From Mobula hypostoma (Eukaryota): a DNA stretch of 64,000 bases. The notes beneath the pieces are model-generated. The model saw only the letters and a list, made by a program, of their open reading frames with translations, did no database searches and was not told the DNA's origin. The position numbers were made by a program, and so were the translations under genes. The stretch spans positions 2,666,001-2,730,000 of the forward strand of contig NC_086109.1 in assembly GCF_963921235.1 (NCBI RefSeq), in the 5' to 3' direction. This document shows positions 6,938-51,591 of this stretch, one piece after another. How positions within the stretch are numbered: the first letter of the stretch is position 1; every line of letters begins with the position of its first letter.

Positions 6938-7199
6938 CTGTGGGACAGAGAGCAGAGGTGAGGGGTTCCATCAGTCAGTGAGCCACCTACAGACATGATC
7001 TAGTCACCCACACCCATCCCCTTGCCCTGCCTTCACCCCGACCAAACACCAATGGACCCCTCAAACGGCCCACACCTCTTTCTGGTAACACCAATCTAGG
7101 AGCCACCATTTCACAAGATTTAGGCATTCTCATTCTTCAACCTCACACCCTCTCATTTATGACAAATCCAAAACAGAATTACATCGGGTGCTTATACAC

Positions 7200-7615
7200 T
7201 GCACCCCAGTGACTGGGTGTCTGGGACAGTGAATCCCAGTGATTTGGTGTGTGGGGGACAGTGCACCCCGGTGACTGGGTGTATGGGGGACAGTGTACCC
7301 AGTGACGGGGTGTATGTGGGGGACAGTGTACCCCAGTGATGGGGTGTGTGTGGGGGACAGTGTACCCCAGTGACGGGGTGTGTATGGTGGACAGTGTACC
7401 CAGTGACGGGGTGTGTGTGGGGGACAGTGTACCCCAGTGATGGGGTGTGTGTGGGGGACAATGTACCCCAGTGACAGGGTGTGTATGTGGGACAGTGTAC
7501 CCCAGTGACTGAGAGTGTGGGGACAGTTTACCCAGTGAGTGGGTGTGTGGGGACAGTGTATCCTGTAGTGAGATATGTGGGGGATGGTTTACCCCAGTGA
7601 CTGGGTTTCAGGGGA
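7200..7615. repeat. Minisatellite, ~30-33 bp unit (GTGACKGGGTGTGTGGGGGACAGTGTACCCCA), ~13 copies
   Basis: Clear tandem recurrence of 'gggacagtgtaccccagtga'. Confidence 0.9.
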
Positions 7616-7682
7616 CATAATACACTCATGACGGTGTGTCTCAGTCCTGGGTAATTTGTGCATGTGGATGTTTTTGTTACAA

Positions 7683-12198: not shown

Positions 12199-13041
12199 TG
12201 TAATGGTCTTTTGGAGGTCACCTGCTGTGATTTTCCCGCCGATGTGAGGTCACATGATGACATGTGCGCCCCCCCCCGTGACTATATAAGGGTCGACCCA
12301 GGAGACGCAGTTGGATTTTGAGTTTGTAGATTTCGGCGTAGAACTTGTTGTGCCTCCGTTTTTGTTGCGTGTTTGTTTTTGTGACGCAGTTTCATTTTTA
12401 AAACGGAAGGTGCGTTCTCTTACAAGGTTTTGTATTATTGGACTGGAAATTTGTGACTGGAAGTGCCAATTTACTCAATTCCGACAGTTTTGAAGGGAGA
12501 GTGAAGGATTCATCGAAGTGAAGGATCGAGAGAAGTCGGCATCGTTTGGCAGTTTGATAAAGAATTGACCTTATTGAGTCTTCGTTGAAGAGAACCTGCA
12601 TTGAGATAACTCTTGCAAAAGGGCAATAAGTTCATGCAAAAAGGTGCTCTCTCTTTGTAAAGGAATTTAAGGTCAGTCGATTTAAACTGTTTATTTTCGG
12701 CATCGGGAATCCTCTGGACAGAACCAGCAGTAAAGGTGCGTCTGTGAAGAAATCTTTCTCCAGAGAAGTATCTCCCAATTGAACGTGTAAATCTGTTGGA
12801 CTTTCGAAGTTATCACTTTAAGAACTGTATCTGACTGTGTCGCTTTAAGAACTGTTTTCGCATTTAACGCTTTAAGAACCAGAGCCGAGTGAAGTTGGTG
12901 AACGGCTGCGAACCTGTTTAACCTCCGGTTAAAGTTTTCCTTTGTTTTCTATTCTTCCTTATCGTTTATACGTGTTTAATAAATGTTTGGTTTTTATATA
13001 ACCTGTCTGGATTGATAGTCATTGTTGCCGGTTACGTAACA
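12199..13041 (+). mobile_element. Solo LTR (843 bp)
   Basis: TGTAAT...GTAACA termini; TATATAAG at ~12283; AATAAA at ~12978; flanks ATGC/GTGC (TSD with one mismatch); no ORF. Confidence 0.8.
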
Positions 13042-13276
13042 GTGCGAGAACATTGGCTCTGTGAAAGTGTGCACTGGTCTGTGCCATGCAGCCCTCTCTT
13101 TGAACTGCTCATTTCCCTTCCCCCTCCTTCTCCCCACTCCCACCCCCTACACCCCTACCCTCTCTGCCGCACCCTCTTCTCTGTCACACTCAAACCCCTT
13201 CCTGTGTACTCATCCAATTCTACTCCCGCCAATGCCTTCTCCCTGACCACTCCCCGCTTCCCCTGCGGGTACTCAC

Positions 13277-13397
13277 GAGTACAGATGTTACGGTGTTAGT
13301 CCGGCTGTTCTCCTCCAGAGGACAACGATGTTGACCACGACCATCACACTGACCAGAGCCACGATGACGAACAGAGCTATCCCCCATCCTGGTAATT
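13277..13397 (-). CDS. Transmembrane exon of IgV receptor gene 1: (E)LPGWGIALFVIVALVSVMVVVNIVVLWRRTAGLTP*
   Basis: Pyrimidine tract plus CCAG acceptor at 13398-13400; GTGAGT donor at 13271-13276; ~21-residue hydrophobic run followed by WRR; phase 1 matches the V exon donor. Confidence 0.8.
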
Positions 13398-13719
13398 CTG
13401 GTTTCGCAGTTGGGGAGGAGAAAAAAGCCCAGTGATTGCCTCCCAAAGAAATGGGACAGACAGGACGCATTCCACACCCCACTCACCCCAGGACCCCAGT
13501 GCCCTCACTACCCTCCCCTCTCCCCACACGGCACACCAATTCTCTGCTTGCCCCCCCCCCCCACTCCATTATCCTCCCTGTGACCAGTCTGTCCTGCTGG
13601 AGACGTGTAGCCATCATCAGAACCACAGCGGGGGCCGCCCGATAACGGAACGGTTAGCAACCCCGCTGCTCTGTGTAAGCAATTTGTATGTTCTTCCCAT
13701 AACCGTTTGGTGTCCTTTT

Positions 13720-13965
13720 AGAATGGAGGTAAAGAGGAATTTTCTTAGCCAGAGGGTGGTGAATCTGTGGGATTCTTTGCCACTGGCAGCTGTGAAGGCC
13801 AAGTCTTTATGTATATTTAAGGCAGAGGTTGATAGATTCTTGACTGGTCAGGGCATGAAGGAATAAGGGGAAAGGCAGGAGATTGCGGCTGAGAGGGAAA
13901 TAGATCAGCCATGATGAAATGGTAGAACAGGTTCGATGGGCCAAATGGCTTGATTCTGCTCTTAT
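13720..13965 (+). mobile_element. CR1 3' end fragment in the V-TM intron
   Basis: Encodes 'RMEVKRNFLSQRVVNLWDSLP'; CR1 3'UTR follows. Confidence 0.85.
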
Positions 13966-14936
13966 AATCACTGATGACACAATGATAAATCCAATGTGGA
14001 GTCTAGAAGAAAATCACTTCCCCATGGAGCTTTGGGAATGTGGGATTTGTTCCCACAGGGGGTAGCCCTGCTGAATTGCACTGAGGGCTTCAGAGGGTAA
14101 CTGGAAAGACACACAAGGGACGGAAGTACAGGAAGCTTCCCATGATGTGGGTGAGCATTCAGCCCTTGAGCCTGTATCCCAGCTCTGACCCCAGTGAGTG
14201 AGGAAAGGTTTGATGGGCTGAATGTCCTCCTCTTGGCCCTATTTCCCATGTTCTGATGTACTTCATATAATAGTTAACCCTGGGATAGAGAAGAATGCTG
14301 AGTGAGATTATTGTGAATGTTATATTACTGTTGGAGTGAGTCAGGAACCATACTGCTGTGTGTGAGTGTACTGTTGTATCCGTGTACTGTGTCACTCACT
14401 GGGACACTATATTCAGTGTAATGAACACACAGGGTCTCACTCAGCACAGCACAGCATGAAGGCTGAGGAATAAACACCTTGCTGAGCTCTGACCTCAGTC
14501 TGGGGAATTAACAAGCAGTGCCTTCTGAAAATGGGATCCCTGAACATGACAGACCAGGACTTTGACCTGGGGATACAGTGTGTAACTGTGACCCACAGAT
14601 ACAGACCCCTCAGCCCATTCACACCAGCCTTTTCCACACCATCGGTTTATCTCCCATTCCCCTGCTCCAGCTCAGCTCCTCGAGGTTTGGATACACAAGG
14701 TCCTCCATTGATGGTTCAATCCTTCATGCCTCCTAGTCTTTGGGGATGTGGTGAGTGTGTCCCCCAGACTCACACTGACTCAGCCTCACTACACTGGGAT
14801 CGTGAGCCCAGCTCTGGACACGGGCAGTCAGTGGGGTTCAGTAAACAGGGGAACACACACGATCTGCCTTCACCCATTAATTGGGGGTGCTTGAGGAACT
14901 GGTGAAACCCGGGCCCCTCCGTGATGTCTCACTCAC

Positions 14937-15257
14937 CGTACACCTCCAGTCGCACTGTTGAATAAGTCCCTCTTCCCGGATGTGTTCTCATGGTCATCTC
15001 ATAATCACCAGCATCTTCTGCTCGTAGATTACGGATTAACAGACTGAAGTCTATGGGGAAAACAGTCATTCGTTGCCTGTCCTCAATAGTACCAAAGTAT
15101 TCAAAACCGCCTCTTGAGTACTTCATGATCCTGATTCGGGGTGATACTCGGTTCCATTCAATCTCCGTAAAGTTCCATGGAATTGAGATCCCAGAAAATA
15201 ACCAGGCCATCTGGCCCCGAACTCCATGCACAGTAGGAGGGGAAGCCCCAGTACTTG
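14937..15257 (-). CDS. Ig V-set exon 1, cysteine-free (CD2/SLAM/CEACAM N-domain-like)
   Basis: Acceptor ccctttgtctccacag at 15258; donor G|GTGAGT at 14936; 321 bp, phase 1/1, open frame; C-strand Trp (EIEWNR), 'FSLLIRNLRAEDAGDYE', 'TVRLEVY'; no Cys; NFT sequon. Confidence 0.9.
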
Positions 15258-15570
15258 CTGTGGAGACAAAGGGAAACGGTCAGTAGATGAGCTCAACAAC
15301 TGGAGGGGAGTCAGAGCTGTGACATCAGCAATATCAGAGCAGGCCATGTGGCTCATCTTCCAGCTCCCAGCCCAGTGAGAGAGCCGGTGCACTGTCCCTT
15401 CATCACACAGTGAGCCCAAGGGAGGAGCAGTGTGAAGACTCTTCGCACCTGGCCCTGAGGAAGGAAGCTGAACCCTGCTGTAGGGAAACATGAGAGCACA
15501 GACATGGGAAACAGGACCCAAGAGGTGAGTGCTCTTAAGATAAGAGACAGCTTACAGTTCTTTGCTGATA

Positions 15571-16100
15571 CAGTATTGTGCAAAAGTCTTGGGCACATAT
15601 GTAAATATAGCTCGGGTGCCTAAGTCTTTTGCACAGTACTGTAGTAATTTTCTGTATTTCACTGTACTGCTGTTGCAAAACAAAATCATGTCATATGTGA
15701 GTGATGATAAACCTGATTCTGATATGGGTCTCTATTGTAGACTGAGGGTTGGAAGGGGGCAGGGAGGGGGGAATCTTGCTTGGGAAAAGGGGAAGGGAGA
15801 GGGGAGGGAGGGGGAAGCACCAAAGAGACATTCTGTAATGATCAGTAAATCAATTGTTTGGAATCCAATGACCTTGCCTGGTGTCTCAGGGCTGTGTGCA
15901 TCTGCACCCGCACCAACCCCCACCCCGGCACCACTTCTCTGTCACCTATCCCACACCCCTCCCACGGCACTCCACCCTCACCATTCCCAACATCCTTTGC
16001 TCCCACCAGATTTACAAACTCACTCTCCGCTCCACGTTGACAAATACAGCACTGTGCATCCTAGCTATAGATATGTGTCTAAGACTTTTGCACAGTACTG
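15571..16100. mobile_element. Tc1/mariner-type MITE with CAGTACTGTGCAAAAGTCTT TIRs and TA flanks
   Basis: TA|cagtattgtgcaaaagtctt at 15571; inverted copies end at 15641|TA and 16100|TA. Confidence 0.85.
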
Positions 16101-16334
16101 TATATTATCAGAAAAGTAATCCTCTCTCCAGGATAACTAAACATCAGAAGAGATGCATTCAGTTTAAAGGCAAAAAGATCACCCTTTCCTGGAGTAATGA
16201 GCTCGTAATAAGTTAGAGAGGAGAAAAATGCTTTTGCTTTTTATTCTATATTCCAGACAACATTGGATGTTGGAAATTTGCCAGTTTATACCTCTTTATG
16301 ATTTTTCTCTGTCTCTGTTTTCCACAGATCAATA

Positions 16335-18361
16335 CTTTCCCCTTTCTACCTTCTACCCTAAAGAGAAGGTGCACGGAGCCTAACGAGCAAGGCTCCAGAG
16401 ACCAAGACAAACAAGAGGTGGACATGGGAGGCTGAGGAGTGGTTACAAGATTATCTTGAGTCGGTGGACTTGGCCGTGTTCGAGAACTCATCTGAAGACC
16501 TGAATGACTACTCCAGGGTCGTTACAGACTTTATTAAAACAACTGTGGATGAGTGTGTCTCCATGAAATCGTTCAGGACTTTCCCCAGTCAGAAGCCCTG
16601 GATGAAAAACAAAATCCAGAACCTGCTGACAACCGGATCAGAGGCAGTCAAGTCTGGAGATCAAGAATGCTACAAAAGGTGCAGGCATGATCTCTGAAAA
16701 GCCATCTCTCAGGCGAAGTGGAGATTCTGGATTAGACTGGAATCAATGTGAGATGCTTGACAGCTGTGACAGGGCTTGAATGCCATAACCTCCTGCAAAG
16801 CGAAATCTTGCAACATAGGGGAGTGCAGAGCTTCATTTCCAGCTGAGCTCAATGCCTTCTATGCTCGCTTTGACCACCAGCACAGGGAGGAACCGTCATG
16901 CACCCCCATGTTTCCTGATGATCCTTTAGTTTCAGTATCTGAAATAACATGCAGGCTGCCTTCAAGAAAGTGAATGCAAGGAAAGCATCTGAGCTGGACA
17001 GATTACCTGGCAGAGTACTGAAGACCTGTGCTGACCAACTGGCTGGTGTATTCACGGATATCTTCAACCTCTCACTCCAACAGTGTGTGGTATCTGACTG
17101 CTTCAAGTGGGCATCAATCGTACCGATACCCAAGAAGAGTGTGGTAACCTGTCTAAATGACTAGCGCCTAGTAGCACTTGCATCCACAGTGATAAAATGT
17201 TTTGAAAACTGGGTGTTGAAGCATATCAGCTCCTGTCTGAATGGTGACTTGAATCTTCTCCATTTCGCCTACTGAAGCAACAAGTCTACAGCAGATGCTA
17301 TCTCATTGGCTCTTCACACAACCTAGGAACATCTGGGCAGCAAAGATGTGTACATCAAGATGCTCATTATCGATTACAGCTGAGTATTTCACACCATCAT
17401 CCCCTCAAAACTGATCAGTAAACTCCAAAACCTGAGCATCAATACTGCTTGTGTAATTGGATCCTGGATTTGCTCACTTGCAGACCCTAGTCAGTTCAGT
17501 TCGGATTGGCAAAAACATCTCCTGCACAATCTCCATCAGCACAGGAACACCGCAGGGATGTGTGCTTAGCCCCCCGCTCTACTCACTTTACACCTGTGAC
17601 TGTGTGGCTAAGTACACTTCCAACACCATCTACAAGCTTGCTGACAAGACCACTGTTGTGGGCTGTATTAAAGGGTGTGATGAATCAGCACACAGGCAGG
17701 AGATTGAAAACTTGGCTGAGTGGTGAAATAACAACAATCTCTCACTCAAAATCAGTAAGACCAAGGAACTGATTGTAGACTTGAGGAGATGGAAACCAGA
17801 GGTCCATGAGCCAGTAATTGTCGGAGGATCAGAAGTGGAGAGGGTCAGTAACTTTAAGTTCATGCGTGTCACTATCTCAGAGGACCTGACCTGGACCCAT
17901 CATATAAATGTCATTATGAAGAAAGCACGACAGCACTTCAACTTCCTCAGGAATCTGCGGAGGTTCCAAGAACTTGACAAACTTCTATAGATAATGTGGT
18001 GGAAAGTGTGCTGATAACTGCATTACGGCCTGGTATGGGAACACCAATGCCTTTGAGCAGAAAATCCTACAAAAGGTAATGAATTTGGCCCAGTACATCA
18101 CTGGTAAAAGCCTCCAATCATTGAGCACATCTACATGAAACGTTGCAATAGAAAAGCAGCATCCATCATCAAAGATTCTCATCACCCAAGCCATGCTCTT
18201 TTCTCGCTGCTGTCATCAGATAGAACCTACAGGTGCCTCAGGACTCACACCTCCCGGTTCACAAACAGTTTCTACCCTCAACCATCAGGCTATTGAACAA
18301 AAGGAATAGTTGCACTCATTTAAGGATTCTGTTATATTGTTATTTCATGCTGGTTATTTAC
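16335..18361 (+). mobile_element. Rex1/Babar LINE, decayed ORF (3' UTR resumes at ~21758-21940 after the CR1 insertion)
   Basis: ORFs 16464..16697, 16949..17164, 17457..17726 (GTPQGCVLSPPLYSLYT, KLADKTTVVG), 17781..17990; 3'UTR continuous across an 11-bp duplication. Confidence 0.88.
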
Positions 18362-21300
18362 ATAGATAGGACAAAGGAGGAGGTCCTGAAGAGAGATTTC
18401 CAGGAGTTAGGAAGAAAGCTGAGAAGCAGGACCTCCAGGGTAGTAATCTCGGGATTGCTACCTGTGCCACGTGCTAGCGAGGGCGAGAGTAGTCGGATCA
18501 GGCAGATAAATGCGTGGCTGAGAGACTGGTGTAGGGGGCAGGGCTTCAGATTCTTGGATAATTGGGATCTTTTCTGGGGGAAGTATGACCTGTTCAAAAA
18601 GGACAGGTTACACCTGAACCCGAAGGGGACCAATATCCTGGCAGGAAAGTTTAATAGGGCTGTTAGGGAGGGTTTAAACTAATTTGGCAGGGGTATGGGA
18701 ACCGGAATGACAGAGCAGAGGAAGGGGAAAACAGAAATAAATCTAAGATAGTGAGCAGTAAAGATATCAGGAGAGACAGGCAGGTGATGGGGCAAATGTG
18801 TAGCCATTGGGATGAGTTGCAGTGCAATAAAGTTACAGTGAAATCAAAGCGAAAAGTACCAAATACTGGTCTTAAGGTGTTGTACTTAAATGCACGCAGC
18901 ATAAGGAATAAGGTGGATGATCTTGTTCTACAGCTACAGATTGGCAGGTATGATATTGTGGCCATCACTGAGACCTGGCTAAAGGATGCATGTCTCTGGG
19001 AGCTGAACGTCCAAGGATACACGGTGTATCGGAAGGATAGGAAGGTAGGTAGAGGGGGAGGCGTGGCTTTATTGGTAAGAAATGATATTAAATCATTAGA
19101 AAGAGGTGATATAGGATCAGAAGGTGCAGAATCTTTATGGGTTGAGCTAAAAAATCGCAGGGGTAAAAGGACCCTGATGGCAGTTATTTATAGGTCTCCA
19201 AACAGCTGCAGTGATGTGGACTACAAATTACAACAGGAGATAGAAAAGGTTTGTCAGAAGGGCAGTGTTATGATACTTGTGGGGGATTTTAACATGCGAG
19301 TAGATTGGGAAAATCAGGTCGGCACAGGATCTCAAGAGAGAGAATTTGTAGAATGTCTGCGAGATGGCTTTTTAGAACAGCTTGTTGCTGAGCCCACTAG
19401 GGGATCGGCTGTACTGGATTGGGTATTGTGTAATGAACCGGAGGTGATTGGAGAGATTGAGGTGAAGGAACCCTTAGGAGGCAGTGATCATAACATGATT
19501 GAGTTCACTGTGAAATTAGAAAAAGAGAAGCCGAAATCTGATGTGTCGGTGTTTCAGTGGAGTAAAGGAAATTACAGTGGCATGAGAGAGGAACTGGCCA
19601 AAGTTGACTGGAAAGAGATACTAGCGGGAAAGACAGCAGAGCAGCAGTGGCTGGAGTTTATGCGAGAAATGAGGAATGTGCAAGACAGGTATATTCCAAA
19701 AAAGAAGAAATTTTCGAGTGGAAAAAGGATGCAACCGTGGTTTACAAGAGAAGTCAAAGCCAAAGTTAAAGCAAAAGAGAGGGCATACAAGGAAGCAAAA
19801 ATTAGTGGGAAGAGAGAGGATTGGAAAGTTTTTAAAACCTTACAAAAGGAAACCAAGAAGGTCATTAAGAGAGAAAAGATTAACTATGAAAGGAAGCTAG
19901 CAAATAATATCGAAGAGGATACTAAAAGCTTTTTCAAGTATATAAAGAATAAAAGACAGGTGAGAGTAGATATAGGACCGATAGAAAATGATGCTGGAGA
20001 AATTGTAATGGGAGATGAGGAGATGGCAGAGGAACTGAACAAGTATTTTGCATCAGTCTTCACTGAGGAAGACAGCAGGATACCGGACACTCAAGGGTGG
20101 CAGGGAAGAGAAGTGTGCGCAGTCACAATTACGACAGAGAAAGTACTCAGGAAGCTGAATAGGCTAAAGGTAGATAAATCTCTTGGACCAGATGGAATGC
20201 ACCCTCGTGTTCTGAAGGAAGTAGCTGTGGAGATTGCGGAGGCATTAGCGATGATCTTTCAAAAGTCGATAGATTCTGGCATGGTTCCGGAGGACTGGAA
20301 GATTGCAAATGTCGCTCCGCTATTTAAGAAGGGGGCAGGGAAGCAAAAAGGAAATTATAGACCTGTTAGCTTGACAACCGTGGTTGGGAAGTTGTTGGAG
20401 TCGATTGTCAAGGATGAGGTTACAGAGTACCTGGAGGCATATGAGAAGATAGGCAGAACTCAGCATGGATTCCTTAAAGGAAAATCCTGCCTGACAAACC
20501 TATTACAATTTTTTGAGGAAATTACCAGTAGGCTAGACAAGGGAGATGCAGTGGATGTTGTATATTTGGATTTTCAGAAGGCCTTTGACAAGGTGCCACA
20601 CATGAGGCTACTTAACAAGATAAGAGCCCATGGAATTACGGGAAAGTTACATACGTGGATAGAGCGTTGGCTGATTGGCAGGAAACAGAGAGTGGGAATA
20701 AAGGGATCCTATTCTGGTTGGCTGCCGGTTACCAGTGGTGTTCCGCAGGGATCAGTGTTGGGGCCGCTTCTTTTTACATTGTACATCAATGATTTAGATT
20801 ATGGAATAGATGGCTTTGTGGCTAAGTTTGCTGATGATACGAAGATAGGTGGAGGGGCCAGTAGTGCTGAGGAAACGGAGAGTCTGCAGAGAGACTTGGA
20901 TAGATTGGAAGAATGGGCAGAGAAGTGGCAAATGAAGTACAATGTTGGAAAGTGTATGGTTATGTACTTTGGCAGAAAAAATAAACGGGCAGACTATTAT
21001 TTAAATGGGGAAAGAATTCAAAGTTCTGAGATGCAATAGGACTTGGGAGTCCTCGTACAGGATACCCTTAAAGTTAACCTCCAGGTTGAGTCAGTAGTGA
21101 AGAAAGCGAATGCAATGTTGGCATTCATTTCTAGAGGAATAGAGTATAGGAGCAGGGATGTGTTGCTGAGGCTCTATAAGGCGCTGGTGAGACCTCACTT
21201 GGAGTACTGTGGGCAGTTTTGGTCTCCTTATTTAAGAAAGGATGTGCTGACGTTGGAGAGGGTTCAGAGAAGATTCACTAGAATGATTCCGGGAATGAGA

Positions 21301-21757
21301 GGGTTAACATATGAGGAACGTTTGTCCGCTCTTGGACTATATTCCTTGGAGTGTAGAAGAATGAGGGGAGACCTCATAGAAACATTTCGAATGTTAAAAG
21401 GCATGGACAGAGTGGATGTGGCAAAGTTGTTTCCCATGATGGGGGAGTCTGGTACGAGAGGGCATGACTTAAGGATTGAAGGGCGCCCTTTCAGAACAGA
21501 AATGCAAAGAAATTTTTTTAGTCAGAGGGTGGTGAATCTATGGAATTTGTTGCCACGGGCAGCAGTGGAGGCCAAGTCATTGGGTGTATTTAAGGCAGAG
21601 ATTGATAGGTATCGGAGTAGCCAGGGCATCAAAGGTTATGGTGAGAAGGCGGGGGACTGGGACTAAATAGGAGAAAATGGATCAGCTCATGATAAAATGG
21701 CAGAGCAGACTTGATGGGCCAAATGGCCTACTTCTGCTCCTTTGTCTTATGGTCTTA
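18362..21757 (+). mobile_element. Young CR1 LINE, truncated within ORF1, with 11-bp TSD
   Basis: ORF1 esterase C-terminus (RVVISGLLPV...DRLHLNPKG); ORF2; CTTATGGT tail; TGGTTATTTAC at 18351-18361 and 21758-21768. Confidence 0.95.
18751..21666 (+). pseudogene. CR1 ORF2 (APE endonuclease + RT), a single in-frame TAG at 21037-21039
   Basis: 762-aa and 207-aa ORFs are in the same frame; YLNARS, GDFN, SDHN, QHGF, FADDTK motifs intact. Confidence 0.93.
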
Positions 21758-22561
21758 TGGTTATTTACTGCTATTTATTTATACCTGCATTTGCACAGTT
21801 TGTTTGCAGTGAACAGTTCCTGATGTTTACAATTACTGTTCTATAGATTTGCTAAGTTTGGCCAGCAGAAAAAGAATCTCAAGGTTGTATGTGGTGATAT
21901 GTACGTACTTTGATAAAAAATTTAACTGTGAACTTCGAATTTTGAACCCATTTGCCCTGATTAGGAAAGCTTTGTAAGAAATCCTGTCTGAATACAACTC
22001 TGATATTTTCCTATATCAATGTTGTGATTTCCCCTCCTCTGCTGTCTTCCAGCTGGTCACATTTGAATCTTCTCTTCCCAGGAACATCGAATTGCCAGTG
22101 CTGGCCCTCCTTCATCTGCGTATTCTGCTGCTAAAGGGATAAGTATAGATGGGTACGTGATTATCCACAAGAATGTGGTGAGCTGAAGGTCTCTATCCAT
22201 GCTGCCCTAGATCCTTGCCTCAGTTTCTTTAGATATCTGTCCAGGTCTCTGCCCCTGTGCTTGGGGAAATCAGTCCTTCCTGGTTACATGGTGCAGACCC
22301 CTACCCTCACTACCTTACCCCTGTTCCATTGTCTCTTTGCCTCCCCTCTCCAGGACAAACAGCTCCAAAATTAAATTAATTAAGTTGTGCACTCTATTTG
22401 CTCTCTTTTGCACTACTTATTTAATGTAACATTTTATATTGTAATTTATAGTTTGTTTTACAGTTTTACAACATTCCAGTAGTAAATGTCTACAATATTT
22501 TCGCTCCTTTGTGGCAGATCAGGCAACATTTTTTGCCATTTCATTAGCACTTGTCTGTTTT

Positions 22562-22686
22562 TTTTCACAAGCCCGACTTGCTAGCTCGACATTCAACACA
22601 GTATGGATGGAAAGTGTGCTGGATTCGAATCCAGGACCGTTCGGTCTCAAAGTCTGGTGCTGATACCATTACACCACCGGCTGGCT
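22562..22686 (-). mobile_element. tRNA-derived SINE (5' part)
   Basis: Minus strand GGTGTAATGG (A box) and GGATTCGAATCC (B box); same family as 37893-38095. Confidence 0.75.
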
Positions 22687-23159
22687 GTACCCCCCTCCCC
22701 CCACTACATTTGCTGATAGACAACAGTTGACGGGAGGAGGAGGCTGCATGAACATCCCCACCCTCCCTCACTGACGGTGGGACCCAGCTCGTGAGTGCTG
22801 GAGACAAGGCTGATCATTCCATCCATGTTCAGACAGAAGTGCTGAGTGGATGATCTCCCTTGACTCCATTTGCCGCATCCCTGCCCGGGTGAGCAGGCCA
22901 GCTCCACCTTCCCATGGTTCGTAGTTTTGCTTTCCTCTGCCACCCACGTGGACACTGTGCACCACCTGGAAATGTTTTAACCAGGAGTGGTGAGCTGGTG
23001 TCAGTGTGCAGTGACCTCGTTCTGACAGGATGAGTGGCTAGTGAAACACGGCATCAAATCGTGGCAGAAAGCGGGAGAGGATCAGAACTTCTCTGGTAAG
23101 CAGAAAGAGGAGAGTTACGTGAAGTGGAGAATGTAGCTGGGATGCCAATATAGAGTGAG

Positions 23160-23740
23160 AGACGAACACACAGACACAGACACAGAGACAGAGACAGGCA
23201 GACACACAGACACAGACGTGCACACAGACACAGACAGACACGCGCACACACACAGAGACACAGATACATGCGCGCGCACACAGACACAGACAGACACGCA
23301 CGTGCAGACACATGCGCCCACAGACGCACACACACTACATACACGCACACACACACAGACAGACGCACACACAGACACGCACACACAGACACAGACACAC
23401 ACAGACACAGACACACACACACACACACTACACACACAGACACGAACACACACAGACACACTACAAACACTTCAAACACAGACACACACACACTACAAAC
23501 ACGCGCACACAGACACTACACGCACACAGACACTACACGCACACAGACACTACACGCACACAGACACTACACGCACACAGACACAAACACGCACACAGAC
23601 ACAAACATACACAGACACTACAAACACACGCTACAAACACAGTCACACAGACACACACTACAAACACACAGAGAGCATACCTACAGCACACACATGTACA
23701 CAATCCCCCCTCTCTCTCTCCATCTCTCTGCACTGCTCTC
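23160..23740. repeat. Compound CA/CAGA microsatellite running into an assembly gap
   Basis: (ACACAG)n and (CA)n; the HT/CV-rich ORFs here are artefacts. Confidence 0.95.
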
Positions 23741-23869
23741 NNNNNNNNNNNNNNNNNNNNNNNNNNNNNNNNNNNNNNNNNNNNNNNNNNNNNNNNNNNN
23801 NNNNNNNNNNNNNNNNNNNNNNNNNNNNNNNNNNNNNNNNNNNNNNNNNNNNNNNNNNNNNNNNNNNNN
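23741..23869. other. Assembly gap (129 N)
   Basis: N run. Confidence 1.
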
Positions 23870-26800
23870 CTCACTCTACCTCTCTCTCCCTCACTTCCTC
23901 TTCCATTACTGCTCTCTCTCTCTCTGCCTCTACTTCTCTCTTTCTTTCTCCTCCTTTTCCTCTTTTTTAAAAATATTTTATTTATTTTTTAAAGAAGAAA
24001 TATAAGGACTCAATTAATACAACAATTAATACATATTGAAAAATAATTAATTCAAATACATTAATAAGTCAGAGAGAGAAAAAAAGGAACACCCATCCCA
24101 ACAGCATCTCCCCTCATTTAGAAAAAAGGAGGGAGGAAAAAAACATAAAAGACAGAGGAAAGAAAGGAAAGAAGAAAAGAGAAAAAAAAGAAAGTGGGCA
24201 TCCGGCTCTCAGTCAGTTTAAAACAAAAATTAAAGAAACTAGCTTATAATAAGGGATATATTTAAAAAAAATTAAAATAAATAGATTAAACAATCTGGGC
24301 ATTTAAGTAATCCAAATATGGTTGCCAAATCTCAATGAACATAGTGTATCCATTCCTGAGAGTATAAGTAATCTTCTCAAGGGGTATACAACTTTGCATT
24401 TCTTTATTCCAACCATCAATATGTACAAGGGCATCGGATTTCCATGTTACCGCTATGCATTTCCTGGCCACTGACAACGTAATTTTAATAAATTTGGATT
24501 TATCCCTGGGGAGGTTAATTTTCCAAACTGCTAAGTTCACCAGGAGAAACAATTCTGGGTCTCGAGGGAAATCCATCCCCAGAATCTTTCCCAGTACCTC
24601 CCCCAGATCATCCAAAAAGATCTCAGTTTCGTGCATAGCCAGGTGGAATGCAGAAAGGTACCAACATCAATGCCACACCCGAAACACTTGTCAGAAATTT
24701 CTGGTTTATTTTTATGTATTTTTTCAGGTGTGAGATACAACTGATGTGAAAAATTGAAATGTATCATTCTGTATCTAGAGTTGATGAGAGGTAACACTAT
24801 CCAAACATAGATGTGACCAACATTGATGATCAATTACAATGCCCAAATCCGACTCCCATCTCTCCCTCAATCTGTATATACCAAGCTTTGGGCATTGGTC
24901 CTGGAATAAAGAATACGTATTAGAAATAAATTTAGTTATATTCCCCTTTCGAATTAGAATCTCCATGTCTGAGCACCTTGGTAGGACCAGTGACGGACCC
25001 AAACAGTCCCTCAAAAAAGATCATAATTGGAGATAGCAGAAGAATGAGTTATTAGACAAATCATATTTATTTTTAAGTCCCTCAAAAGACATAAATTGCT
25101 TCTGCTGATTATAACAATCTTCAATGTGCCTGATACCGTGTTGATACCAGGTGACTAGAAACTTATTACCCAGAGTCATGGGTATTAATCTGTTCTGAGA
25201 TAGAGGTGTCTTTGAGGATATTCCTTTTTTTTGACCCATAAATTGTTTAATTTTTTCCCAGATATATATTACATGTCTCAGTAGAGGATTGTTTGTTTTC
25301 TTTTTAATTAATTTGGAGTCCCATTTATATATAAATTCTTCTGCCATCTCTTCTCCTACCATAGGTAAGCCAATTGTAACCCAAGAAGGAACAGTTGTCT
25401 CATCAAAAAAAGAAGCAATAAAACGTGCTTGTGCAGCTAAATAATATTTTTTTTAAATCTTTTAAAATTTTTTTAAACCTCCCAATTTATAGTCCCAGGT
25501 CAATTTTTCCATGGAGATGAAATACTGAAGTCTTGGCATTATCTTCATTTTTATACAGTTTACCCTGCCCGTCAGTGTGATGGGAAGGTTTATCCACCTA
25601 CGTAGGTCCTCCTCGACATTTCGCAGCAAGGGGAGATACTGAAGTTTATAAAGGTCATCCAAATTACGATTAAACTTAAACCCCAGATATTTCATGTTGA
25701 ATTTAACCCATCTGAACTGAGTGCCATATTGATATTGGGCATAGTCTTCTCTACCCAAAGGTAAAATTTCACTTTTATTCCAATTTATTTTATATCCCGA
25801 GACTACCATAATTGTCCAGCAAAGCCCTAAGTCTTACCAAAGAGCCGGCCGGATCAGCCAAATACACTAAAATGTCATCAGCAAATAAATTAATTTTATA
25901 TTCACCCTGGGCCACTTTAAACCCCTTTATGTCTGGATCCCGTCTAACAGCCTCAGCCAATGTCTCTATTGCCAGAACAAATAGAGCTGGAGATGGTGGG
26001 CAACCTTGTCTACTAGATTTATGTAGAGAGAAGACTGGTGAAATCTGCCTGTTCGTAATTATTTTGGCCTTAGACTGATGGCAAAGTGCTCTTATCCAAT
26101 TTATGAATATTTGGCCTAGACCAAATTTTTCCATTGTTTTAAATAAAAAATCCCATTCAAGTCTATCAAAGGCCTTTTCAGCATCTAAAGCCACTGCTAC
26201 AGTCGGGTCCACCTTCGTCCCAGCTAAATGTAATATAGTCAATAGTCTGCCAATATTATCAGATAATTGTCTATTTTTAATAAATCCTGTTTGACCAGAT
26301 TTAATCAATTTTGGCAGATATCGAGCTGATCTATTAGCCAATGCCTTTGCTGTAATTTTATAGTCTGCATTTAAAAGTGAGATAAGCCTATAAGATGCTG
26401 GTTTTAGCGGATCCATATCCTTCTTAAGAATTAACGTAATAATTGCTGTTGAAAAGGATTCCGGTAGAGTATGGGTCTCCTCAGCCTGAGTCACAACCCT
26501 CATAAAAAGGGGCATTAATTGATCCTTAAATTCTCTATAAAATTCAGGGGAAAACCATCATCTCCCAGCGATTTATTAGCCTGTAATAAGCCTAGGGCTC
26601 TTTCAATTTCATCCCTCGAAAAAGGGGCATTCAATTCTTCCTGATCTTGTTGACTCAATTTGGGAAGTTATAAATTAGACAAGAAGTCATCAATTTTCAG
26701 TGAGTCACCCACTGATTCTGATTTATATAGTTCCGAATAGAACTGCTTAAAAGTATCATTTGTTTCTTTGGCTTATATAAAATCTTACCTTCCCCTGTTT

Positions 26801-27558
26801 GAATCGCATTTATTGTTCCGGAGGTTTCTTCCACCCTCAATTGCCAAAACAGTACTTTCTGGGTTCTCTCTGCTGATTCATAATATTTTGTTTTGATTTT
26901 AGTATCATTTTTTTCTATTCTATAGGTTTGTTTTGTGTTATGGTCTAATTTTTATTTATTAATGTTTTATAATTTTCCTCTGTTAAATTCTGACAATCTT
27001 TTTCTAATTGTGTTATTTCTTTCCCCAATTCATTTAATCCTGTTACATATTTATTTTTTATACCCTTAACATATCCAATTATCTGTCCTCTTAAGTATGC
27101 TTTTAATGTGTCCCACGTTAAGAAATTATTGGCAGTAGAGGGTGAGTTCGACTCACAGAACAATTCTATTTGAGCTCTAATAAAACTGCAAAACTCTGGT
27201 CTTTTCAACAGCAAAGGATTAAAATGCCATCTATATAATGTTTTTTGTTTATCCGGCATTTCAACTGATACAATTAAAGGTGAATGGTCCGATAGTAGGC
27301 TAGCGGGATATTCTGTCTGAATGGTCCTACTTTCTAATTTAGCTGATATTAGAAATGTCAGTTCTAGAGTAGGAATCATATTGTTTTGAATAGAAAAAGT
27401 AGTCTCTTTCCCTTGGGTGCTGCCATCTCCAAGCATCTATTATATTCAAGTCCTTCATGAAGGCCAGGGTGGTTTTTGCTGCCCTGACCTTCACTGATCT
27501 ATCTAAATTGGATCCAGACAAAAATTGAAATCCCCTCCAATTAAGATATTTTCATATC

Positions 27559-30500
27559 ATAGAAACTATCGAAACCATAGAAACTACAGCACAGAAACAG
27601 GCCTTTTGGCCCTTCTTGGCTGTGCCGAACCATTTTCTGCCTAGTCCCACTGACCTGCACACGGACCATATCCCTCTGTACACCTCCCATCCATGTATCT
27701 GTCCAATTTATTCTTAAATGTTAAAAAAGAACCCACATTTACCACCTCGTCTGACAGCTCATTCCATACTCCCACCACTCTCTGTGTGAAGAAGCCCCCC
27801 CTAATGTTCCCTTTAAACTTTTCCCCCCTCACCCTTAACCCATGTCCTCTGGTTTTTTTCTCCCCTTGCCTCAGTGGAAAAAGCCTGCTTGCATTCACTC
27901 TATCTATACCCATCATAATTTTATATACCTCTATCAAATCTCCCCTCATTCTTCTACGCTCCAGGGAATAAAGTCCTAACCTATTCAACCCTTCTCTGTA
28001 ATTGAGTTTCTCAAGTCCCGGCAACATCCTTGTAAACCTTCTCTGCACTCTTTCAACCTTATTTATATCCTTCCTGTAATTTGGTGACCAAAACTGAACA
28101 CAATACTCCAGATTCGGCCTCACCAATGCCTTATACAATCTCATCATAACATTCCAGCTCTTATACTCAATACTTCGATTAATAAAGGCCAAAAGCTCTC
28201 TTTACGACCCTATCTACCTGTGACGACACTTTTAGGGAATTTTGTATCTGTATTCCCAGATCCCTCTGTTCCACTGCACTCCTCAGTGCCTTAACATTAA
28301 CCCTGTATGTTCTACCTTGGTTTGTCCTTCCAACATGCAATACCTCACACTTGTCTGTATTAATCTCCATCTGCCATTTTTCAGCCCATTTTTCCAGCTG
28401 GTCCAAGTCCCTCTGCAGGATCTGAAAACCTTCCTCACTGTCTACTACACCTCCAATCTTTGTATCATCAGCAAACTTGCTGATCCAATTTACCACATTA
28501 TCATCCAGATCATTGATATAGATGACAAATAACAATGGACCCAGCACTGATCCCTGTGGCACACCACTAGTCACAGGCCTCCACTCGGAGAAGCAATTCT
28601 CTACTACCACTCTTTGGCTTCTTCCATTGAGCCAATGTCTAATCCAATTTACCACCTCTCCATGTATACCTAGCGACTGAATTTTCCTAACTAACGTCCC
28701 ATGCGGGACCTTGTCAAAGGCCTTACTGAAGTCCATGTAGACAATATCCACTGCCTTCCCTTCATCCACTTTCCTGATAACCTCCTTGAAAAACTCCAAT
28801 AGATTGGTCCAACATGACCTACCACGCACAAGCATTTGGATAGACAGGGACTTATTAGGGAGATGTTGACTCTCCCTAATAAGTCCCTGTCTATCCAAAT
28901 GCTTGTAGATTCTGTCTCTTAGTACTCCCTCCAATAACTTACCTACTACTGACGTTAAACTCACTGGCCTATAATTTCCCGGATTACTTTTCGATCCTTT
29001 TTTAAACAACAGCACAACATGAGCCACTCTCCAATCCTCCGGCACCGCACCTGTAGACAGCGACATTTTAAATATTTCTGCCAGGGCCCCTGCAATTTCA
29101 ACACTAGTCTCCTTCAAGGTCCGCGGGAACACCCTGTCAGATCCCGGGGGTTTATCCACTTTAATTTTCCTCAAGACGGCAAGGACCTCCTCCTTTTCAA
29201 TCTGTACAGTTTCCATGATCTCACTACTTGTTTCCCTTAATTCCATAGACTTCATGCCAGTTTCCTTAGTAAATACAGATGCAAAAAACCTATTTAAGAT
29301 CTCCCCGATTTCCTTTGGTTCCGCACATAGCATCTTCAAGAGGACCAACTTTATTCCTTACAATCCTTTTGCTCTTAATATACCTGTAAAAGCTCTTTGG
29401 ATTATCCTTCACTTTGACTGCCAAGGCAACCTCATGTCTTCTTTTAGCCCTCCTGATTTCTTTCTTAAGTATTTTCTTGCACTTCTTATACTCCTCAAGC
29501 ACCTTATTTACTCCCTGCTTCCTATACATGTCATACAACTCCCTCTTCTTCTTTATCAGAGTTGCAATATCCCTTGAGAACCAAGGTTCCTTATTCCTAT
29601 TCACTTTGCCTTTAATCCTGACAGGAACATACAAACTCTGCACTCTCAAAATTTCTCCTTTGAAGGCTTCCCACCTACTGATCACATCTTTGCCAGAGAA
29701 CAACCTATCCCAATCCACGCATTTTAGATCCTTTCTCATTTCTTCAAATTTGGCCTTCTTCCAGTTCAGAACCTCAGTTCTAGGACCAGATCTATCCTTG
29801 TCCATGATCAAGTTGAAACTAATGGTGTTATGATCACTGGAACCAAAGTGCTCCCCTACACAGACTTCTGTCACTTGTCCTAACTCGTTTTCTAACAGGA
29901 GATCCAATATTGCATCCCCTGTAGTTGGTCCCTCTATATATTGATTTAGAAAACTTGCCTGAACACATTTTACAAACTCTAAACCATCTAGACCCCTAAC
30001 AGTATGGGAGACCCAATCAATATATGGAAAATTAAAATCCCCTACCACCACAACTTTATGTTTCCTGCAGTTGCCTGCTATCTCTCTGCAGATTTGCTCT
30101 TCCAATTCTCGTTGACTATTGGGTGGTCTGTAATACAATCTGACTAATGTGGCCATACCTTTCCTGTTTCTCAGCCCCACCCATAAGGACTCAGTAGACA
30201 AGCCCTCTAATCTGTCCTGCCTGAGCACTGCTGTAATATTTTCCCTAACGAGCAATGCTACTCCCCCACCTTTCATTCCTCTGCCTCGATCACATCTGAA
30301 ACATCGGAACCCCGGAATATTAAGCTGCCAGTCCTGCCCCTCCTGTAGCCAAGTTTCACTAATTGCTATAACATCATAATTCTACATGTCAATCCACGCC
30401 CTCAACTCGTCCGCCTTCCCCGCAATACTCCTAGCATTGAAATATATACACCTCAGAAGATTTTTACCACCACTCACAACCTTTCTATGAGTGGATTTGC

Positions 30501-30612
30501 TTGAACTTTTAACATCATTTATTTTCACCCCAGCCGCACTGTCAGCTCTGGCACTCTGGTTCCCATCCCCCTGCAAATCTAGTTTAAAGCCTCCCCAATA
30601 GCATTAGAGCAA
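27559..30612 (-). mobile_element. CR1 LINE (ORF2 with frameshifts) nested in the L1 endonuclease region
   Basis: ORFs 30382..30576, 29290..30276, 28179..29348, 27641..28192; ATAGAAAC tail at 27559; host L1 codons GAA-G|GA-TAT rejoin. Confidence 0.93.
28828..28906. repeat. Perfect 36-bp inverted repeat with 7-nt spacer
   Basis: ACAAGCATTTGGATAGACAGGGACTTATTAGGGAGA-tgttgac-TCTCCCTAATAAGTCCCTGTCTATCCAAATGCTTGT. Confidence 0.95.
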
Positions 30613-31520
30613 CTTCAGCAACTTTCAAAAAAATATTTTGGATATATTTCTCGTTGTCATAATTGGGGGCATATAAATTCAAAAGTGTCCAGGATTCTGA
30701 ATATATTTGACAACTGAGCATAACAAATCTCCTGGCCAGATCTATGATCGTACCCCCCACCTTCACTGGTGAATTCTTCCCTATCAATACTGCCACTCCC
30801 CTGGCTTTAGAATTAAAGGAGGACACTATTACTTGACCAACCCATCCTCTCTTTAATTTGTTATGTTCTGTCACTGTAAGATGAGTTTCTTGAAGAAAGG
30901 TAATATTAATATGATTTTTTTAAGATATGCCAGGACCTTTTTCCTTTTTATCGGTCCATTTATCCCATTAACATTAAGACTTAAAAATTTAATTGCTCTA
31001 TTCATAGTCATCAGATTTTATTGGTTGATAAATCCTGCCCACAAAAAAGTATAAATTAATCCCACTTCTTTGAGTGATTCTGAGATATTTGGTGCCATTC
31101 TCAATAGAGCATAGAAAATAGAAAGGAAACCAAAGAGGAAAGAAAAAAAATTTTAAAAAAATGAAAAGAAAGGGAGGAAATACCTCCCAACTGGTGCTCC
31201 AAGTCCACGGCGCCTTAACCCCTCTTACTGTGGGGTCCGATAAACATCGCACTAAAGATGGACATTCTTTAACATATAACATAATTTATCTTTTTTTTAA
31301 AAAGAGATGAAAAATTTATCCACTCCCCCAATAACTCCTTAATTAAACATCTGTAAAATTAAATTATATTCCACACCAGTTATTACTAAATATCTAACAT
31401 AATCTATAATATTGAAAGTAAATATCATTAATATAGCAATATATCCAAATAAAGAATAGAATTCAAAGAAACTTACTAAATATAACCCTAAATATTGTAA
31501 CTTAATACATATCCAGCATA

Positions 31521-31680
31521 NNNNNNNNNNNNNNNNNNNNNNNNNNNNNNNNNNNNNNNNNNNNNNNNNNNNNNNNNNNNNNNNNNNNNNNNNNNNNNNN
31601 NNNNNNNNNNNNNNNNNNNNNNNNNNNNNNNNNNNNNNNNNNNNNNNNNNNNNNNNNNNNNNNNNNNNNNNNNNNNNNNN
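31521..31680. other. Assembly gap (160 N)
   Basis: N run. Confidence 1.
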
Positions 31681-31689
31681 GAAACATCA

Positions 31690-31940
31690 GTGTGTGATGG
31701 GACAGTGTAGAGGGAGCTTCACTCTGTGCCTGGCCCGTGTCCGGGGAGTGTGTGATGGGACAGTGTAGAGGGAGCTTCACTCTGTGCCTGGCCCGTGTCC
31801 GGGGAGTGTGTGATGGGACAGTGTAGAGGGAGCTTCACTCTGTGCCTGGCCCGTGTCCGGGGAGTGTGTGATGGGACAGCGTAGAGGGAGCTTCACTCTG
31901 TGCCTGACCCGTGTCCTGGGAGTGTGTGATTGGACAGTGT
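31690..31940. repeat. 58-bp tandem repeat (~4.3 copies visible, abuts gap)
   Basis: GTGTGTGATGGGACAGTGTAGAGGGAGCTTCACTCTGTGCCTGGCCCGTGTCCGGGGA repeated with near-identity. Confidence 0.95.
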
Positions 31941-32077
31941 TAAGGGACTTCCTCCATCCATCCTGTTCCTGCTGTTTCTCTCGTGGCAGTGTATGGTCCA
32001 GAACTGTCCCTGTAGTGTAAATAAAAGAGACGGAGAGAGGGAAGTGAAACAGATATATGTTATTTGGTTAAACTTAC

Positions 32078-32129
32078 AGACTGAGAAGAGGGTGAGCCAG
32101 AGGCCCACGAGGAAACACCTGATGTCCAT
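32078..32129 (-). CDS. Signal-peptide exon MDIRCFLVGLWLTLFSV(S) of IgV receptor gene 1
   Basis: ATG, 17 codons + 1 nt, then a perfect GTAAGT donor at 32072-32077; hydrophobic core; phase 1 joins V exon 1 as ...FSVS-STGA-SPP, a plausible cleavage site. Confidence 0.78.
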
Positions 32130-50777: not shown

Positions 50778-51270
50778 CTTGGGGCCTTCATCTTAAAAAG
50801 GATGTGCTGAGCACAGCACAGCATGAAGGCTGAGGAATAAACACCTTGCTGAGCTCAGACCTCAGTCTGGGGAATTAACAAGCAGTGTCCTGGGAAAAAG
50901 ACTGGATAACTGGGATCCCTGAACATGACAGACCAGGCCTTTGACTGGAGATACAATGTGTAACTGTGACCCACAAATACAGACTGTTCAGGCCATTCAC
51001 ACCAGGTCCATTCTCCCTGTGTGCTGAGCTCCCTCTGTCTCAGATACATGAGATTCCCCAGTGTTGGTTCGATCCCTTCCGGCTCCTGTCTCAGTCTCGG
51101 TGGATGTGATGGGTGTATCCTCCAAACTCACACTGACTCAGCCTCACTACACTGGGACTGTGAGCCCAGCTCTGGACACGGGTAGTCAGTGGGGTGCAGT
51201 AAACAGGGAAACACACAGGATCTGCCCTCACCCATCCATTAGGGGTGTTTCAGGGACCGGTCTTACTCAC

Positions 51271-51591
51271 CGTACACCTCCAGTCGCACTGTTGTTCTTT
51301 TTTCAGCTCCTGATCCTGCTGCAGTAAAAATAAGCTCATAATCACCAGAGTCCTCTCTCCGTAGATCATGGATTTCCAGACTAACGTTCCCAGGATGAAA
51401 AGTTATCCTGTTCTTGTACTGCTCATTACTGAAGTAGCTGATGTTCCCATTCGAGTACTTCACATTCTTGATTCTGGGTGATACCCGAATCCAATGAACC
51501 TCAAAGTCTGGACTGACTGGGATCCCAGAAGGTAAGGAGACTGAGTGTCCCTGAGTTCCGGTCACAGTGGTAGGGGGAGCCCCAGTCCCAG
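51271..51591 (-). CDS. Ig V-set exon 2, cysteine-free paralog of exon 14937-15257
   Basis: Acceptor tcttgtctcctcag at 51592; donor G|GTGAGT at 51270; 321 bp, phase 1/1, open; 'EVHWIRVSPRI', 'SLEIHDLRREDSGDYE', 'TVRLEVY'; sequons NIS and NVS. Confidence 0.9.

What the first reader, a model, noticed from the sequence alone, without database searches (positions are those of the whole stretch)
13277..32129. Hidden three-exon gene for a cysteine-free, single-IgV membrane receptor
Three minus-strand exons with canonical, phase-compatible splice sites join in frame across ~17 kb of TEs: leader 32129-32078, V 15257-14937, TM 13397-13277. The product is ~160 aa: MDIRCFLVGLWLTLFSVSSTGA-SPPTVHG...DAGDYE...VRLEVY-ELPGWGIALFVIVALVSVMVVVNIVVLWRRTAGLTP*. 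The V domain lacks the B-F disulfide, which is established for CD2/SLAM and CEACAM N-domains. Most of those receptors have at least one constant-type Ig domain, but I found no C2 exon in the 1.5-kb V-TM intron. Inference: a compact, possibly lineage-specific immune receptor family in a cartilaginous fish.
Basis: partly seen in the sequence, partly recalled or inferred. Interest (0 to 1): 0.82.

Follow-up and report, generated by a model that had tools for sequence, protein, structure and literature searches.

The report
Unannotated devil-ray SLAM/CD2-like V-only gene
The three exons are real and form a very diverged, apparently unannotated member of a large shark-and-ray family of SLAM/CD2-type immune surface proteins, but it has lost the second Ig domain and the signalling tail, and nothing shows it is expressed.

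Summary
The leader (32129-32078), V exon (15257-14937) and TM exon (13397-13277, stop at 13290-13288) have canonical splice sites. The leader-V and V-TM joins are phase-1 compatible and give 160 codons.

The genome is Mobula hypostoma. The V domain is a confident IgV (pLDDT 92.9); its closest solved relatives are CD48, 2B4, CD84 and CD2. It is one of at least 42 paralogous V exons, mostly in a 1.6-Mb cluster on this chromosome. RefSeq already lists relatives in rays and sharks as SLAM family/Ly-9/CD48-like, including V-only forms. The family is therefore neither hidden nor lineage-restricted, but this locus matches no catalogued protein of 64-203 aa.

The leader is the only family-type leader on this strand of the window. 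Paralogs have 4.8-10-kb leader-V introns, so a 16.8-kb LINE-filled intron is plausible. Both N gaps lie in that intron, and continuity across them could not be tested.

There is no C2 exon and no ITSM exon in the window. The TM exon is 121 nt, out of register with the family's 3n rule, and its stop lies 10 nt before a strong donor. The V exon sits on a long branch yet keeps 15 of 15 core residues. No RNA evidence was found.

Most likely this is a tail-less ligand or decoy form; a young pseudogene is the main rival. The scan earlier noted a CD2/SLAM-like family on another piece of this genome (s1-141813).

The parts
32078..32129 (-). Leader (signal peptide) exon: ATG at 32129, 17 codons plus 1 base, GTAAGT donor at 32077-32072
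   Evidence: It is the only leader-like exon on this strand of the window. It aligns with paralog leader exons, and its motif M-D-x-R...W-L-T-L is shared with P0002, P0009, P0012, P0016 and P0020.
15258..32077 (-). Proposed intron 1, 16.8 kb as assembled. It holds two N runs (23741-23869, 31521-31680), at least three LINE fragments and simple repeats.
   Evidence: LINE endonuclease and RT domains lie at 18751-21036 (+), 28182-30276 (-) and 25793-26515 (-). Gap flanks are shown. Paralog leader-V introns are 4.8, 8.7 and 10 kb. Window 20718-18862 is colinear with intron 1 of the paralog at C52:2631925.
14937..15257 (-). V-set Ig exon, 321 nt, phase 1-1, with no Cys in strands B and F
   Evidence: Sequence. 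Pfam V-set scores 27.8 bits. AF2 gives pLDDT 92.9. The best Foldseek matches are CD48, 2B4, CD84 and CD2. The family profile matches PDB CD48 at 4.9e-14. The exon keeps 15/15 of the family's columns that are at least 90% conserved.
13398..14936 (-). Intron 2, 1.54 kb, with no C2 exon. It is partly repeat-derived.
   Evidence: There is no C2 hit. Repeat-like contig pile-ups cover 13650-14060, 14270-14580 and 14690-14900. Positions 14296-14936 are homologous to paralog V-flanking introns.
13277..13397 (-). Transmembrane exon, 121 nt. It gives a short linker, a 23-residue helix containing one Asn, and the tail WRRTAGLTP. The stop TAA is at 13290-13288.
   Evidence: Sequence. It is the only family-type TM in the window. 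It resembles family TM and juxtamembrane segments (P-G-L-x-W-W start, W-R-R-R-A-A-G end). Its length is 3n+1, whereas paralog TM exons are 135, 135 and 99 nt.
13271..13276 (-). Strong GTGAGT donor 10 nt after the stop, in phase 2 of the TM frame. It is probably a relic of splicing to lost cytoplasmic exons, or a 3'UTR donor.
   Evidence: No ITSM or QPPxGN-type tail exon occurs anywhere in the window.

Best explanation
This is a highly diverged member of the devil ray's (Mobula hypostoma) CD2/SLAM-like immunoglobulin-superfamily gene cluster, and it is absent from the protein catalogue.

Shown: the three exons exist, have family-typical sequence, and join in frame. The leader joins V, and V joins TM, in phase 1. 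The product is a 160-residue type I membrane protein with:
- a signal peptide;
- one disulfide-free IgV domain;
- almost no stalk;
- one TM helix;
- a 9-residue cytoplasmic tail.

Shown: unlike most paralogs, it has no C2 exon and no ITSM-bearing tail exons.

Inferred: the three exons form one transcription unit across a 16.8-kb LINE-filled intron.

Inferred: the protein cannot signal through SAP/EAT-2, because it has no ITSM. If it is made, it would act as a cell-surface ligand or decoy. It would use the V-domain face for homophilic or heterophilic contact with other family members on leukocytes, as CD48, CD58 and the short-tailed SLAMF8/9 do.

Inferred: the out-of-register TM exon suggests the short tail arose by a frameshifting change in an ancestor that carried a longer tail.
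For: Family membership:
- The V exon hits ray proteins at 7.7e-49. RefSeq names these SLAM/Ly-9/CD48-like.
- The family profile's best solved relatives are CD48, SLAMF5, the CD48-CD2 chimera, CD2 and SLAMF6.
- The AF2 model (pLDDT 92.9) matches CD48, 2B4, CD84 and CD2 at TM 0.74-0.86.
- The genome holds at least 42 V-exon paralogs, mostly at 1.2-2.8 Mb of the same chromosome.

Gene model:
- Splice sites are canonical and phases are compatible.
- The leader is unique in the window and family-type.
- Paralogs in the same genome have leader-V introns of 4.8-10 kb.
- The TM exon begins like family TM exons and ends with the family's W-R-R-x-A-G juxtamembrane motif.

Past or present function:
- The V exon keeps 15/15 of the columns that are at least 90% conserved in 27 relatives, but only 42/89 of the rest.
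- Under neutral drift at 0.3 substitutions per site, an open frame survives in only about 7% of simulations.
- Short-tailed and V-only forms are annotated in the family: P0009, P0016, P0047, P0005 and P0021.
Against: - No expression evidence. No run on record as RNA holds the V exon. Four small runs of the same species, guessed to be RNA, cover only repeat parts and put nothing on the V or TM exon.
- The TM exon is 121 nt (3n+1), whereas paralog TM exons are 135, 135 and 99 nt. Its stop lies 10 nt before a strong donor, which looks like damage.
- The window holds no C2 exon and no tail exons.
- The V exon is on a long branch, 0.73 against a median of 0.1. Pairwise dN/dS against paralogs is 0.6-0.97.
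- The locus matches no catalogued protein of 64-203 aa, although paralogs on the same chromosome are annotated.
- The leader and the V/TM exons lie on different sequence blocks, separated by two N runs.
Confidence: 0.5

Rival explanations
1. It is a young pseudogene or gene relic in a birth-and-death cluster. The V exon was functional for most of its history. The gene has since lost its C2 and tail exons and suffered a frameshift in the TM exon, and it is no longer expressed as a protein.
For: - The TM exon length is 3n+1 with a premature TAA before a strong donor, against 3n in three paralogs.
- No C2 or ITSM exons are present.
- The flanks and intron 1 are full of TEs.
- No catalogued protein of 64-203 aa matches the V frame.
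- No RNA coverage was seen.
- The branch is long and dN/dS is near 1.
- The neighbouring V2 exon is itself a truncated duplicate.
Against: - All three exons are still open, with intact ATG, signal peptide, splice sites and TM helix.
- 15/15 core V positions are kept.
- The stop leaves a normal stop-transfer tail, and short tails occur in annotated relatives.
Confidence: 0.33
2. The exons are real but are wired differently. One possibility is that V1 and TM are downstream exons of a multi-V gene that starts at the V2 leader just beyond the window end (V2-V1-TM). The 32129 leader would then be an alternative first exon. The other possibility is that the 32129 leader belongs to exons hidden in the N runs.
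For: - Multi-V members (V-V, V-V-V-TM) are common in the family, and all V exons are phase 1-1.
- V2 (51586-51272) lies upstream on the same strand and has no C2 or TM of its own.
- Gene models in the congener span 49-85 kb.
- Two N runs lie between the leader and V1.
Against: - A family-type leader with an intact ATG and donor sits between V2 and V1. V1 is the first V exon downstream of it in the readable sequence.
- The leader-V distance is within about 2-fold of paralog introns once LINE insertions are allowed for.
Confidence: 0.12

Closest known systems
SLAM family / CD2 family of the Ig superfamily (CD48/SLAMF2, CD84/SLAMF5, 2B4/SLAMF4, CD2, CD58)
   Same: - The N-terminal V-set domain lacks the B-F disulfide.
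- These are the best sequence-profile and structural matches.
- It is a type I membrane protein.
- It lies in a tandem gene cluster, with one domain per phase-1 exon.
   Different: - It has no membrane-proximal C2 domain and no ITSM tail.
- The V domain sits almost directly on the membrane.
- Identity to the solved human and mouse domains is only 15-24%.
SLAMF8 / SLAMF9 and CD48 (family members without ITSMs). Their properties are taken from established knowledge, not tested here.
   Same: They have a SLAM-type ectodomain with a short tail or no cytoplasmic tail, so they act as ligands or modulators rather than as SAP-coupled receptors.
   Different: They keep the V-C2 ectodomain. Here the short tail comes from a stop in an out-of-register TM exon.
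Mobula hypostoma LOC134355872 (P0021, XP_062922449.1). This V-only family member is annotated about 96 kb away on the same chromosome.
   Same: It has the same build: leader, single disulfide-free V, short stalk and TM.
   Different: - P0021 has a long tail with T-I-Y-A-Q-A and T-I-Y-A-T-V motifs.
- Its V domain is only 40% identical to this one.
Hemitrygon akajei 'Ly-9-like isoform X2' (P0009, 173 aa)
   Same: - It has a leader-V-TM architecture with a short tail.
- Its leader is of the same type.
- It has the highest V identity to this exon, 56%.
   Different: - It is an exon-skipping isoform of a gene that has a C2 exon.
- Its ortholog in this genome is the neighbouring paralog at C52:2631925, not this gene.

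Membership tests
CD2/SLAM family (IgSF) | N-terminal V-set Ig domain without the canonical B-F disulfide | tested here: met
   There is no Cys in strands B or F. Pfam V-set scores 27.8 bits against a cut-off of 26. The family profile hits CD48 at 4.9e-14 and SLAMF5 at 1.7e-11. The AF2 model matches CD48, 2B4, CD84 and CD2.
CD2/SLAM family (IgSF) | Membrane-proximal C2-set Ig domain | tested here: not met
   tblastn with 101 family proteins, which include C2 domains about 80% identical to paralogs of this genome, finds no C2 exon in the 64-kb window.
CD2/SLAM family (IgSF) | Type I transmembrane segment (or GPI anchor) | tested here: met
   A 23-residue helix is followed by W-R-R. It resembles family TM and juxtamembrane segments.
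CD2/SLAM family (IgSF) | Cytoplasmic ITSM (T-x-Y-x-x-V/I) that recruits SAP/EAT-2. It is absent from CD48, SLAMF8 and SLAMF9. | tested here: not met
   The tail is 9 residues with no Tyr. No ITSM or QPPxGN tail exon occurs in the window. Paralogs and orthologs have them.
CD2/SLAM family (IgSF) | Location in a tandem cluster of family genes, with one domain per phase-1 exon | tested here: met
   At least 42 V exons exist, mostly at C52:1.2-2.8 Mb. The leader and V exons follow the phase-1 rule. The 3' end of the TM exon does not, being 121 nt.
CEACAM/PSG family | CEACAM-type N domain as the best match | tested here: not met
   CEACAM1 hits are partial (profile positions 59-104) and weaker than the full-length CD48 and SLAMF5 hits. 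CEACAM structures rank below CD48, 2B4, CD84 and CD2.
HEPACAM family (a RefSeq name for some relatives) | Orthology to HEPACAM/HEPACAM2 | not tested
   The name comes only from automatic annotation of skate relatives. No HEPACAM structure appears among the 60 profile hits and 50 structural matches shown.

The most novel reading that the evidence does not exclude
The locus is a live, rapidly diversifying 'minimal' SLAM-like gene: V-only, stalk-less and tail-less. Its V exon is kept distinct from its paralogs by selection, being more diverged than its own flanking introns at both synonymous and non-synonymous sites. That would mark a decoy or ligand arm of an elasmobranch SLAM-like system shaped by pathogen pressure or by paired-receptor evolution.
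Probability: 0.2. Interest if true: 0.5.

Novelty: new member of a known kind. Interest (0 to 1): 0.3.

Why it matters
SLAM/CD2 receptors tune lymphocyte and NK-cell contacts in mammals. Their history in cartilaginous fishes, the oldest jawed vertebrates with adaptive immunity, is essentially undescribed. Four full-text searches found no paper on it.

This locus adds one unannotated, extreme variant to a cluster of at least 42 V exons in the devil ray. That cluster mixes V-C2, multi-V and V-only genes, with or without ITSM tails. On its own the gene is a modest annotation gain. Its main value is as an example of birth-and-death evolution and loss of the tail and C2 domain in this family.

Tried and rejected
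- RNA support. Two searches of public runs found no run on record as RNA that holds the V exon. Laying four small runs guessed to be RNA put contigs only on repeats (12400-13100, 13650-14060, 14270-14900). Nothing fell on the V or TM exon. This is uninformative rather than negative: tissue and library are unknown.
- DNA search of the whole genome with the leader and TM exons returned only the query itself.
- A nucleotide alignment of the TM exon to paralog TM exons is too poor to place an indel. I first read an alternative frame ('..VTSVL') as homologous to the paralog tail and ending in phase 1. Recounting showed the donor starts at 13276, so that frame ends in phase 0, and I withdrew the claim (note 2).
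- A possible relic tail exon at about 13062-13006 (Tyr-containing, after a G-rich intron like the paralogs') has no significant similarity to family tails. I dropped it.
- A search for a closer TM paralog or a second leader type in the 1.5-kb flanks of 30 paralog loci found none.
- DNA of the M. birostris orthologous region could not be fetched because the file was too large.
- Four literature searches for SLAM/CD2 in cartilaginous fishes found nothing relevant.
- Whether a longer RefSeq model (over 203 aa, for example V2-V1) covers this V exon could not be checked with the length-limited protein search.
Full report
**Observation.** The three minus-strand exons are exactly as described.
- The leader starts with ATG at 32129 (A at -3, G at +4). 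It codes M-D-I-R-C-F-L-V-G-L-W-L-T-L-F-S-V plus one base, and GTAAGT follows.
- The V exon, 15257-14937, is 321 nt. It follows a pyrimidine tract and cag, and ends before GTGAGT. It is phase 1 at both ends.
- The TM exon starts at 13397. The V/TM join makes a Glu codon. It continues L-P-G-W, a 23-residue helix, then W-R-R-T-A-G-L-T-P and TAA at 13290-13288. GTGAGT starts at 13276.
- The joined CDS is 160 codons.
- Both N runs named by the scan's program (23741-23869, 31521-31680) lie inside the proposed intron 1, so no reading frame crosses them. They do separate the leader from V and TM. I could not test continuity or orientation. Their flanks are CA/CT-rich simple sequence and a 58-bp minisatellite, typical places for assembly breaks.

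**What the V exon is.**
- It passes Pfam V-set above the gathering score and has a weak 2B4 N-domain hit.
- An exhaustive HMMER search finds 85 relatives, 31 at E<=1e-10, the best at 7.7e-49.
- The named relatives are RefSeq models from rays, skates and sharks: Pristis, Hemitrygon, Hypanus, Mobula, Narcine, Amblyraja, Leucoraja, Rhinoraja, Heptranchias, Stegostoma, Hemiscyllium and Cetorhinus. They are called SLAM family member 5/7/8-like, Ly-9-like, CD48-like or HEPACAM-like.
- A profile of 28 V domains finds CD48 (4.9e-14), SLAMF5 (1.7e-11), the CD48-CD2 chimera, CD2, SLAMF6, 2B4 and CD58 among solved structures.
- AlphaFold2 on that alignment gives an IgV with pLDDT 92.9. Foldseek ranks CD48, 2B4, CD84 and CD2 first.
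- The missing B-F disulfide is therefore a family trait of the CD2/SLAM kind, not a peculiarity of this gene.

**Whose genome.**
- Two hits, P0010 and P0021, are 100% identical to V exons elsewhere in this genome.
- They are Mobula hypostoma RefSeq proteins on a record of 98,202,791 bases, exactly the length of the window's contig.
- The window is therefore from a lesser devil ray chromosome, and 'cartilaginous fish' is right.

**Family context.**
- The genome has at least 42 V-exon matches, most between 1.2 and 2.8 Mb of this chromosome.
- I fetched 20-30 kb around seven paralogs. Their builds are leader, then a 4.8-, 8.7- or 10-kb intron, then V, C2, TM and a tail exon, or arrays of two to three V exons.
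- Annotated relatives include V-only proteins with ITSM tails (P0011, P0013, P0021, P0022). They also include short-tailed forms (P0009, P0016, P0047, P0005).
- A single-V architecture is therefore a known variant within the family.

**Is the leader the right one?**
- Two scans were run: one for the family motif, and one for any ATG, hydrophobic, phase-1-donor exon. Each returns only 32129 on the whole minus strand.
- It aligns with three paralog leader exons through the ATG context, the W-L-T-L core, the donor and the first intron bases. Its 5'UTR even matches the mis-extended N-terminus of a Pristis model.
- No other V exon lies between it and V1 in readable sequence.
- Intron 1 holds three LINE pieces with endonuclease and RT domains. 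Its V-proximal part is colinear with a paralog's intron 1.
- The pairing is the parsimonious model, but it is an inference.

**What is missing.**
- tblastn with all 101 family proteins then fetched finds no C2 exon in 64 kb.
- Motif scans find no ITSM or QPPxGN tail exon.
- The paralog tail exon has no DNA counterpart downstream of the TM exon.
- The TM exon is 121 nt. The V exon (321 nt) and three paralog TM exons (135, 135 and 99 nt) are all multiples of three.
- In the TM frame the strong donor at 13276 is in phase 2, and the stop lies 10 nt before it. This suggests a net +1/-2 change in an exon that once spliced onward. The TM exons are too diverged to locate such a change.

**Function or decay?**

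For function:
- The V exon keeps 15 of 15 columns that are at least 90% conserved in the other 27 sequences. It keeps 21/33, 12/30 and 9/26 in progressively less conserved classes.
- A neutral walk of 0.3 substitutions per site leaves the frame open in only about 7% of trials.
- The ATG, signal peptide, splice sites and TM helix are all intact.

For decay:
- The branch is long, 0.73 against a family median of 0.1, and has no close relative.
- Pairwise dN/dS is 0.6-0.97 with dS about 0.55-0.7.
- The C2 and tail exons are lost, and the TM exon is out of register.
- No catalogued protein of 64-203 aa shares words with the V frame, although paralogs on the same chromosome are annotated.
- There is no RNA coverage.

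Oddly, the V exon is less similar to paralogs (60-66%) than its flanking introns are (74-76% upstream, 78-83% downstream, 91-94% further out). Other paralog pairs mostly show the reverse, or equal values.

**Verdict.**
- It is a real member of a known family, most likely a tail-less, V-only ligand or decoy form (0.5).
- The main rival is a young pseudogene (0.33).
- Alternative wiring with V2 or with exons hidden in the gaps is a minor rival (0.12).
- It is a new member of a known kind and of modest interest.
- The scan had already met a related CD2/SLAM-like family on another piece of this genome (s1-141813).

Noticed in passing
window 50807-51846 (V2 exon 51586-51272, minus) and 60474-64000: A second V exon is 47-48% identical in protein to V1, but 93-96% identical in DNA to the V block of the paralog at C52:2794347. 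Window 64000-60474 is colinear with that paralog type's intron 1, so the V2 leader should lie about 120-175 bp beyond the window end. An insertion of about 8.6 kb (60474-51846, holding the N run 60204-60405) sits about 260 bp upstream of V2. Homology stops at 50807, and no C2 or TM follows. It looks like a truncated duplicate.
   Followed up: partly
window 14296-15478: The V1 exon is more diverged from its paralogs (60-66% identity, dS about 0.55-0.7) than its flanking introns are (74-76% upstream, 78-83% and 91-94% downstream). The distal piece 14296-14636 is 91-94% identical across otherwise distant paralogs. This points to gene conversion of the flanks, a shared repeat, or selection on the exon.
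   Followed up: partly
window 31681-31860: At least three tandem copies of a 58-bp unit directly abut the N run 31521-31680. Similar units lie about 300 bp from V exons in the multi-V paralogs, in the opposite orientation.
   Followed up: no
window 18233-21666 (+): A LINE carries a GDSL-esterase-like ORF1 (18233-18679) followed by an endonuclease plus reverse-transcriptase ORF of 762 codons. Copies or relatives lie in the introns of several paralogs at similar relative positions.
   Followed up: partly
window 7196-7640: A tandem repeat array is shared at 71-83% identity with the region about 250 bp downstream of the cytoplasmic exon of the paralogs at C52:2794347 and C52:2822944. Here it lies 5.6 kb downstream of the TM exon, beyond LINE insertions.
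   Followed up: no
L048 (C52:2794347-2804346), about position 6398: The TM-exon donor of this paralog reads GCAAGT, where its near-identical sister at C52:2822944 has GTAAGT. It is either a GC-AG intron or a disabled donor.
   Followed up: no
Mobula birostris GCA_030028105.1, genes of P0011 and P0007: The RefSeq gene for the 241-residue V-only protein P0011 spans 84.5 kb, and that for P0007 spans 49 kb. Very long introns, or joins across neighbouring cluster members, are therefore usual in annotations of this family.
   Followed up: no
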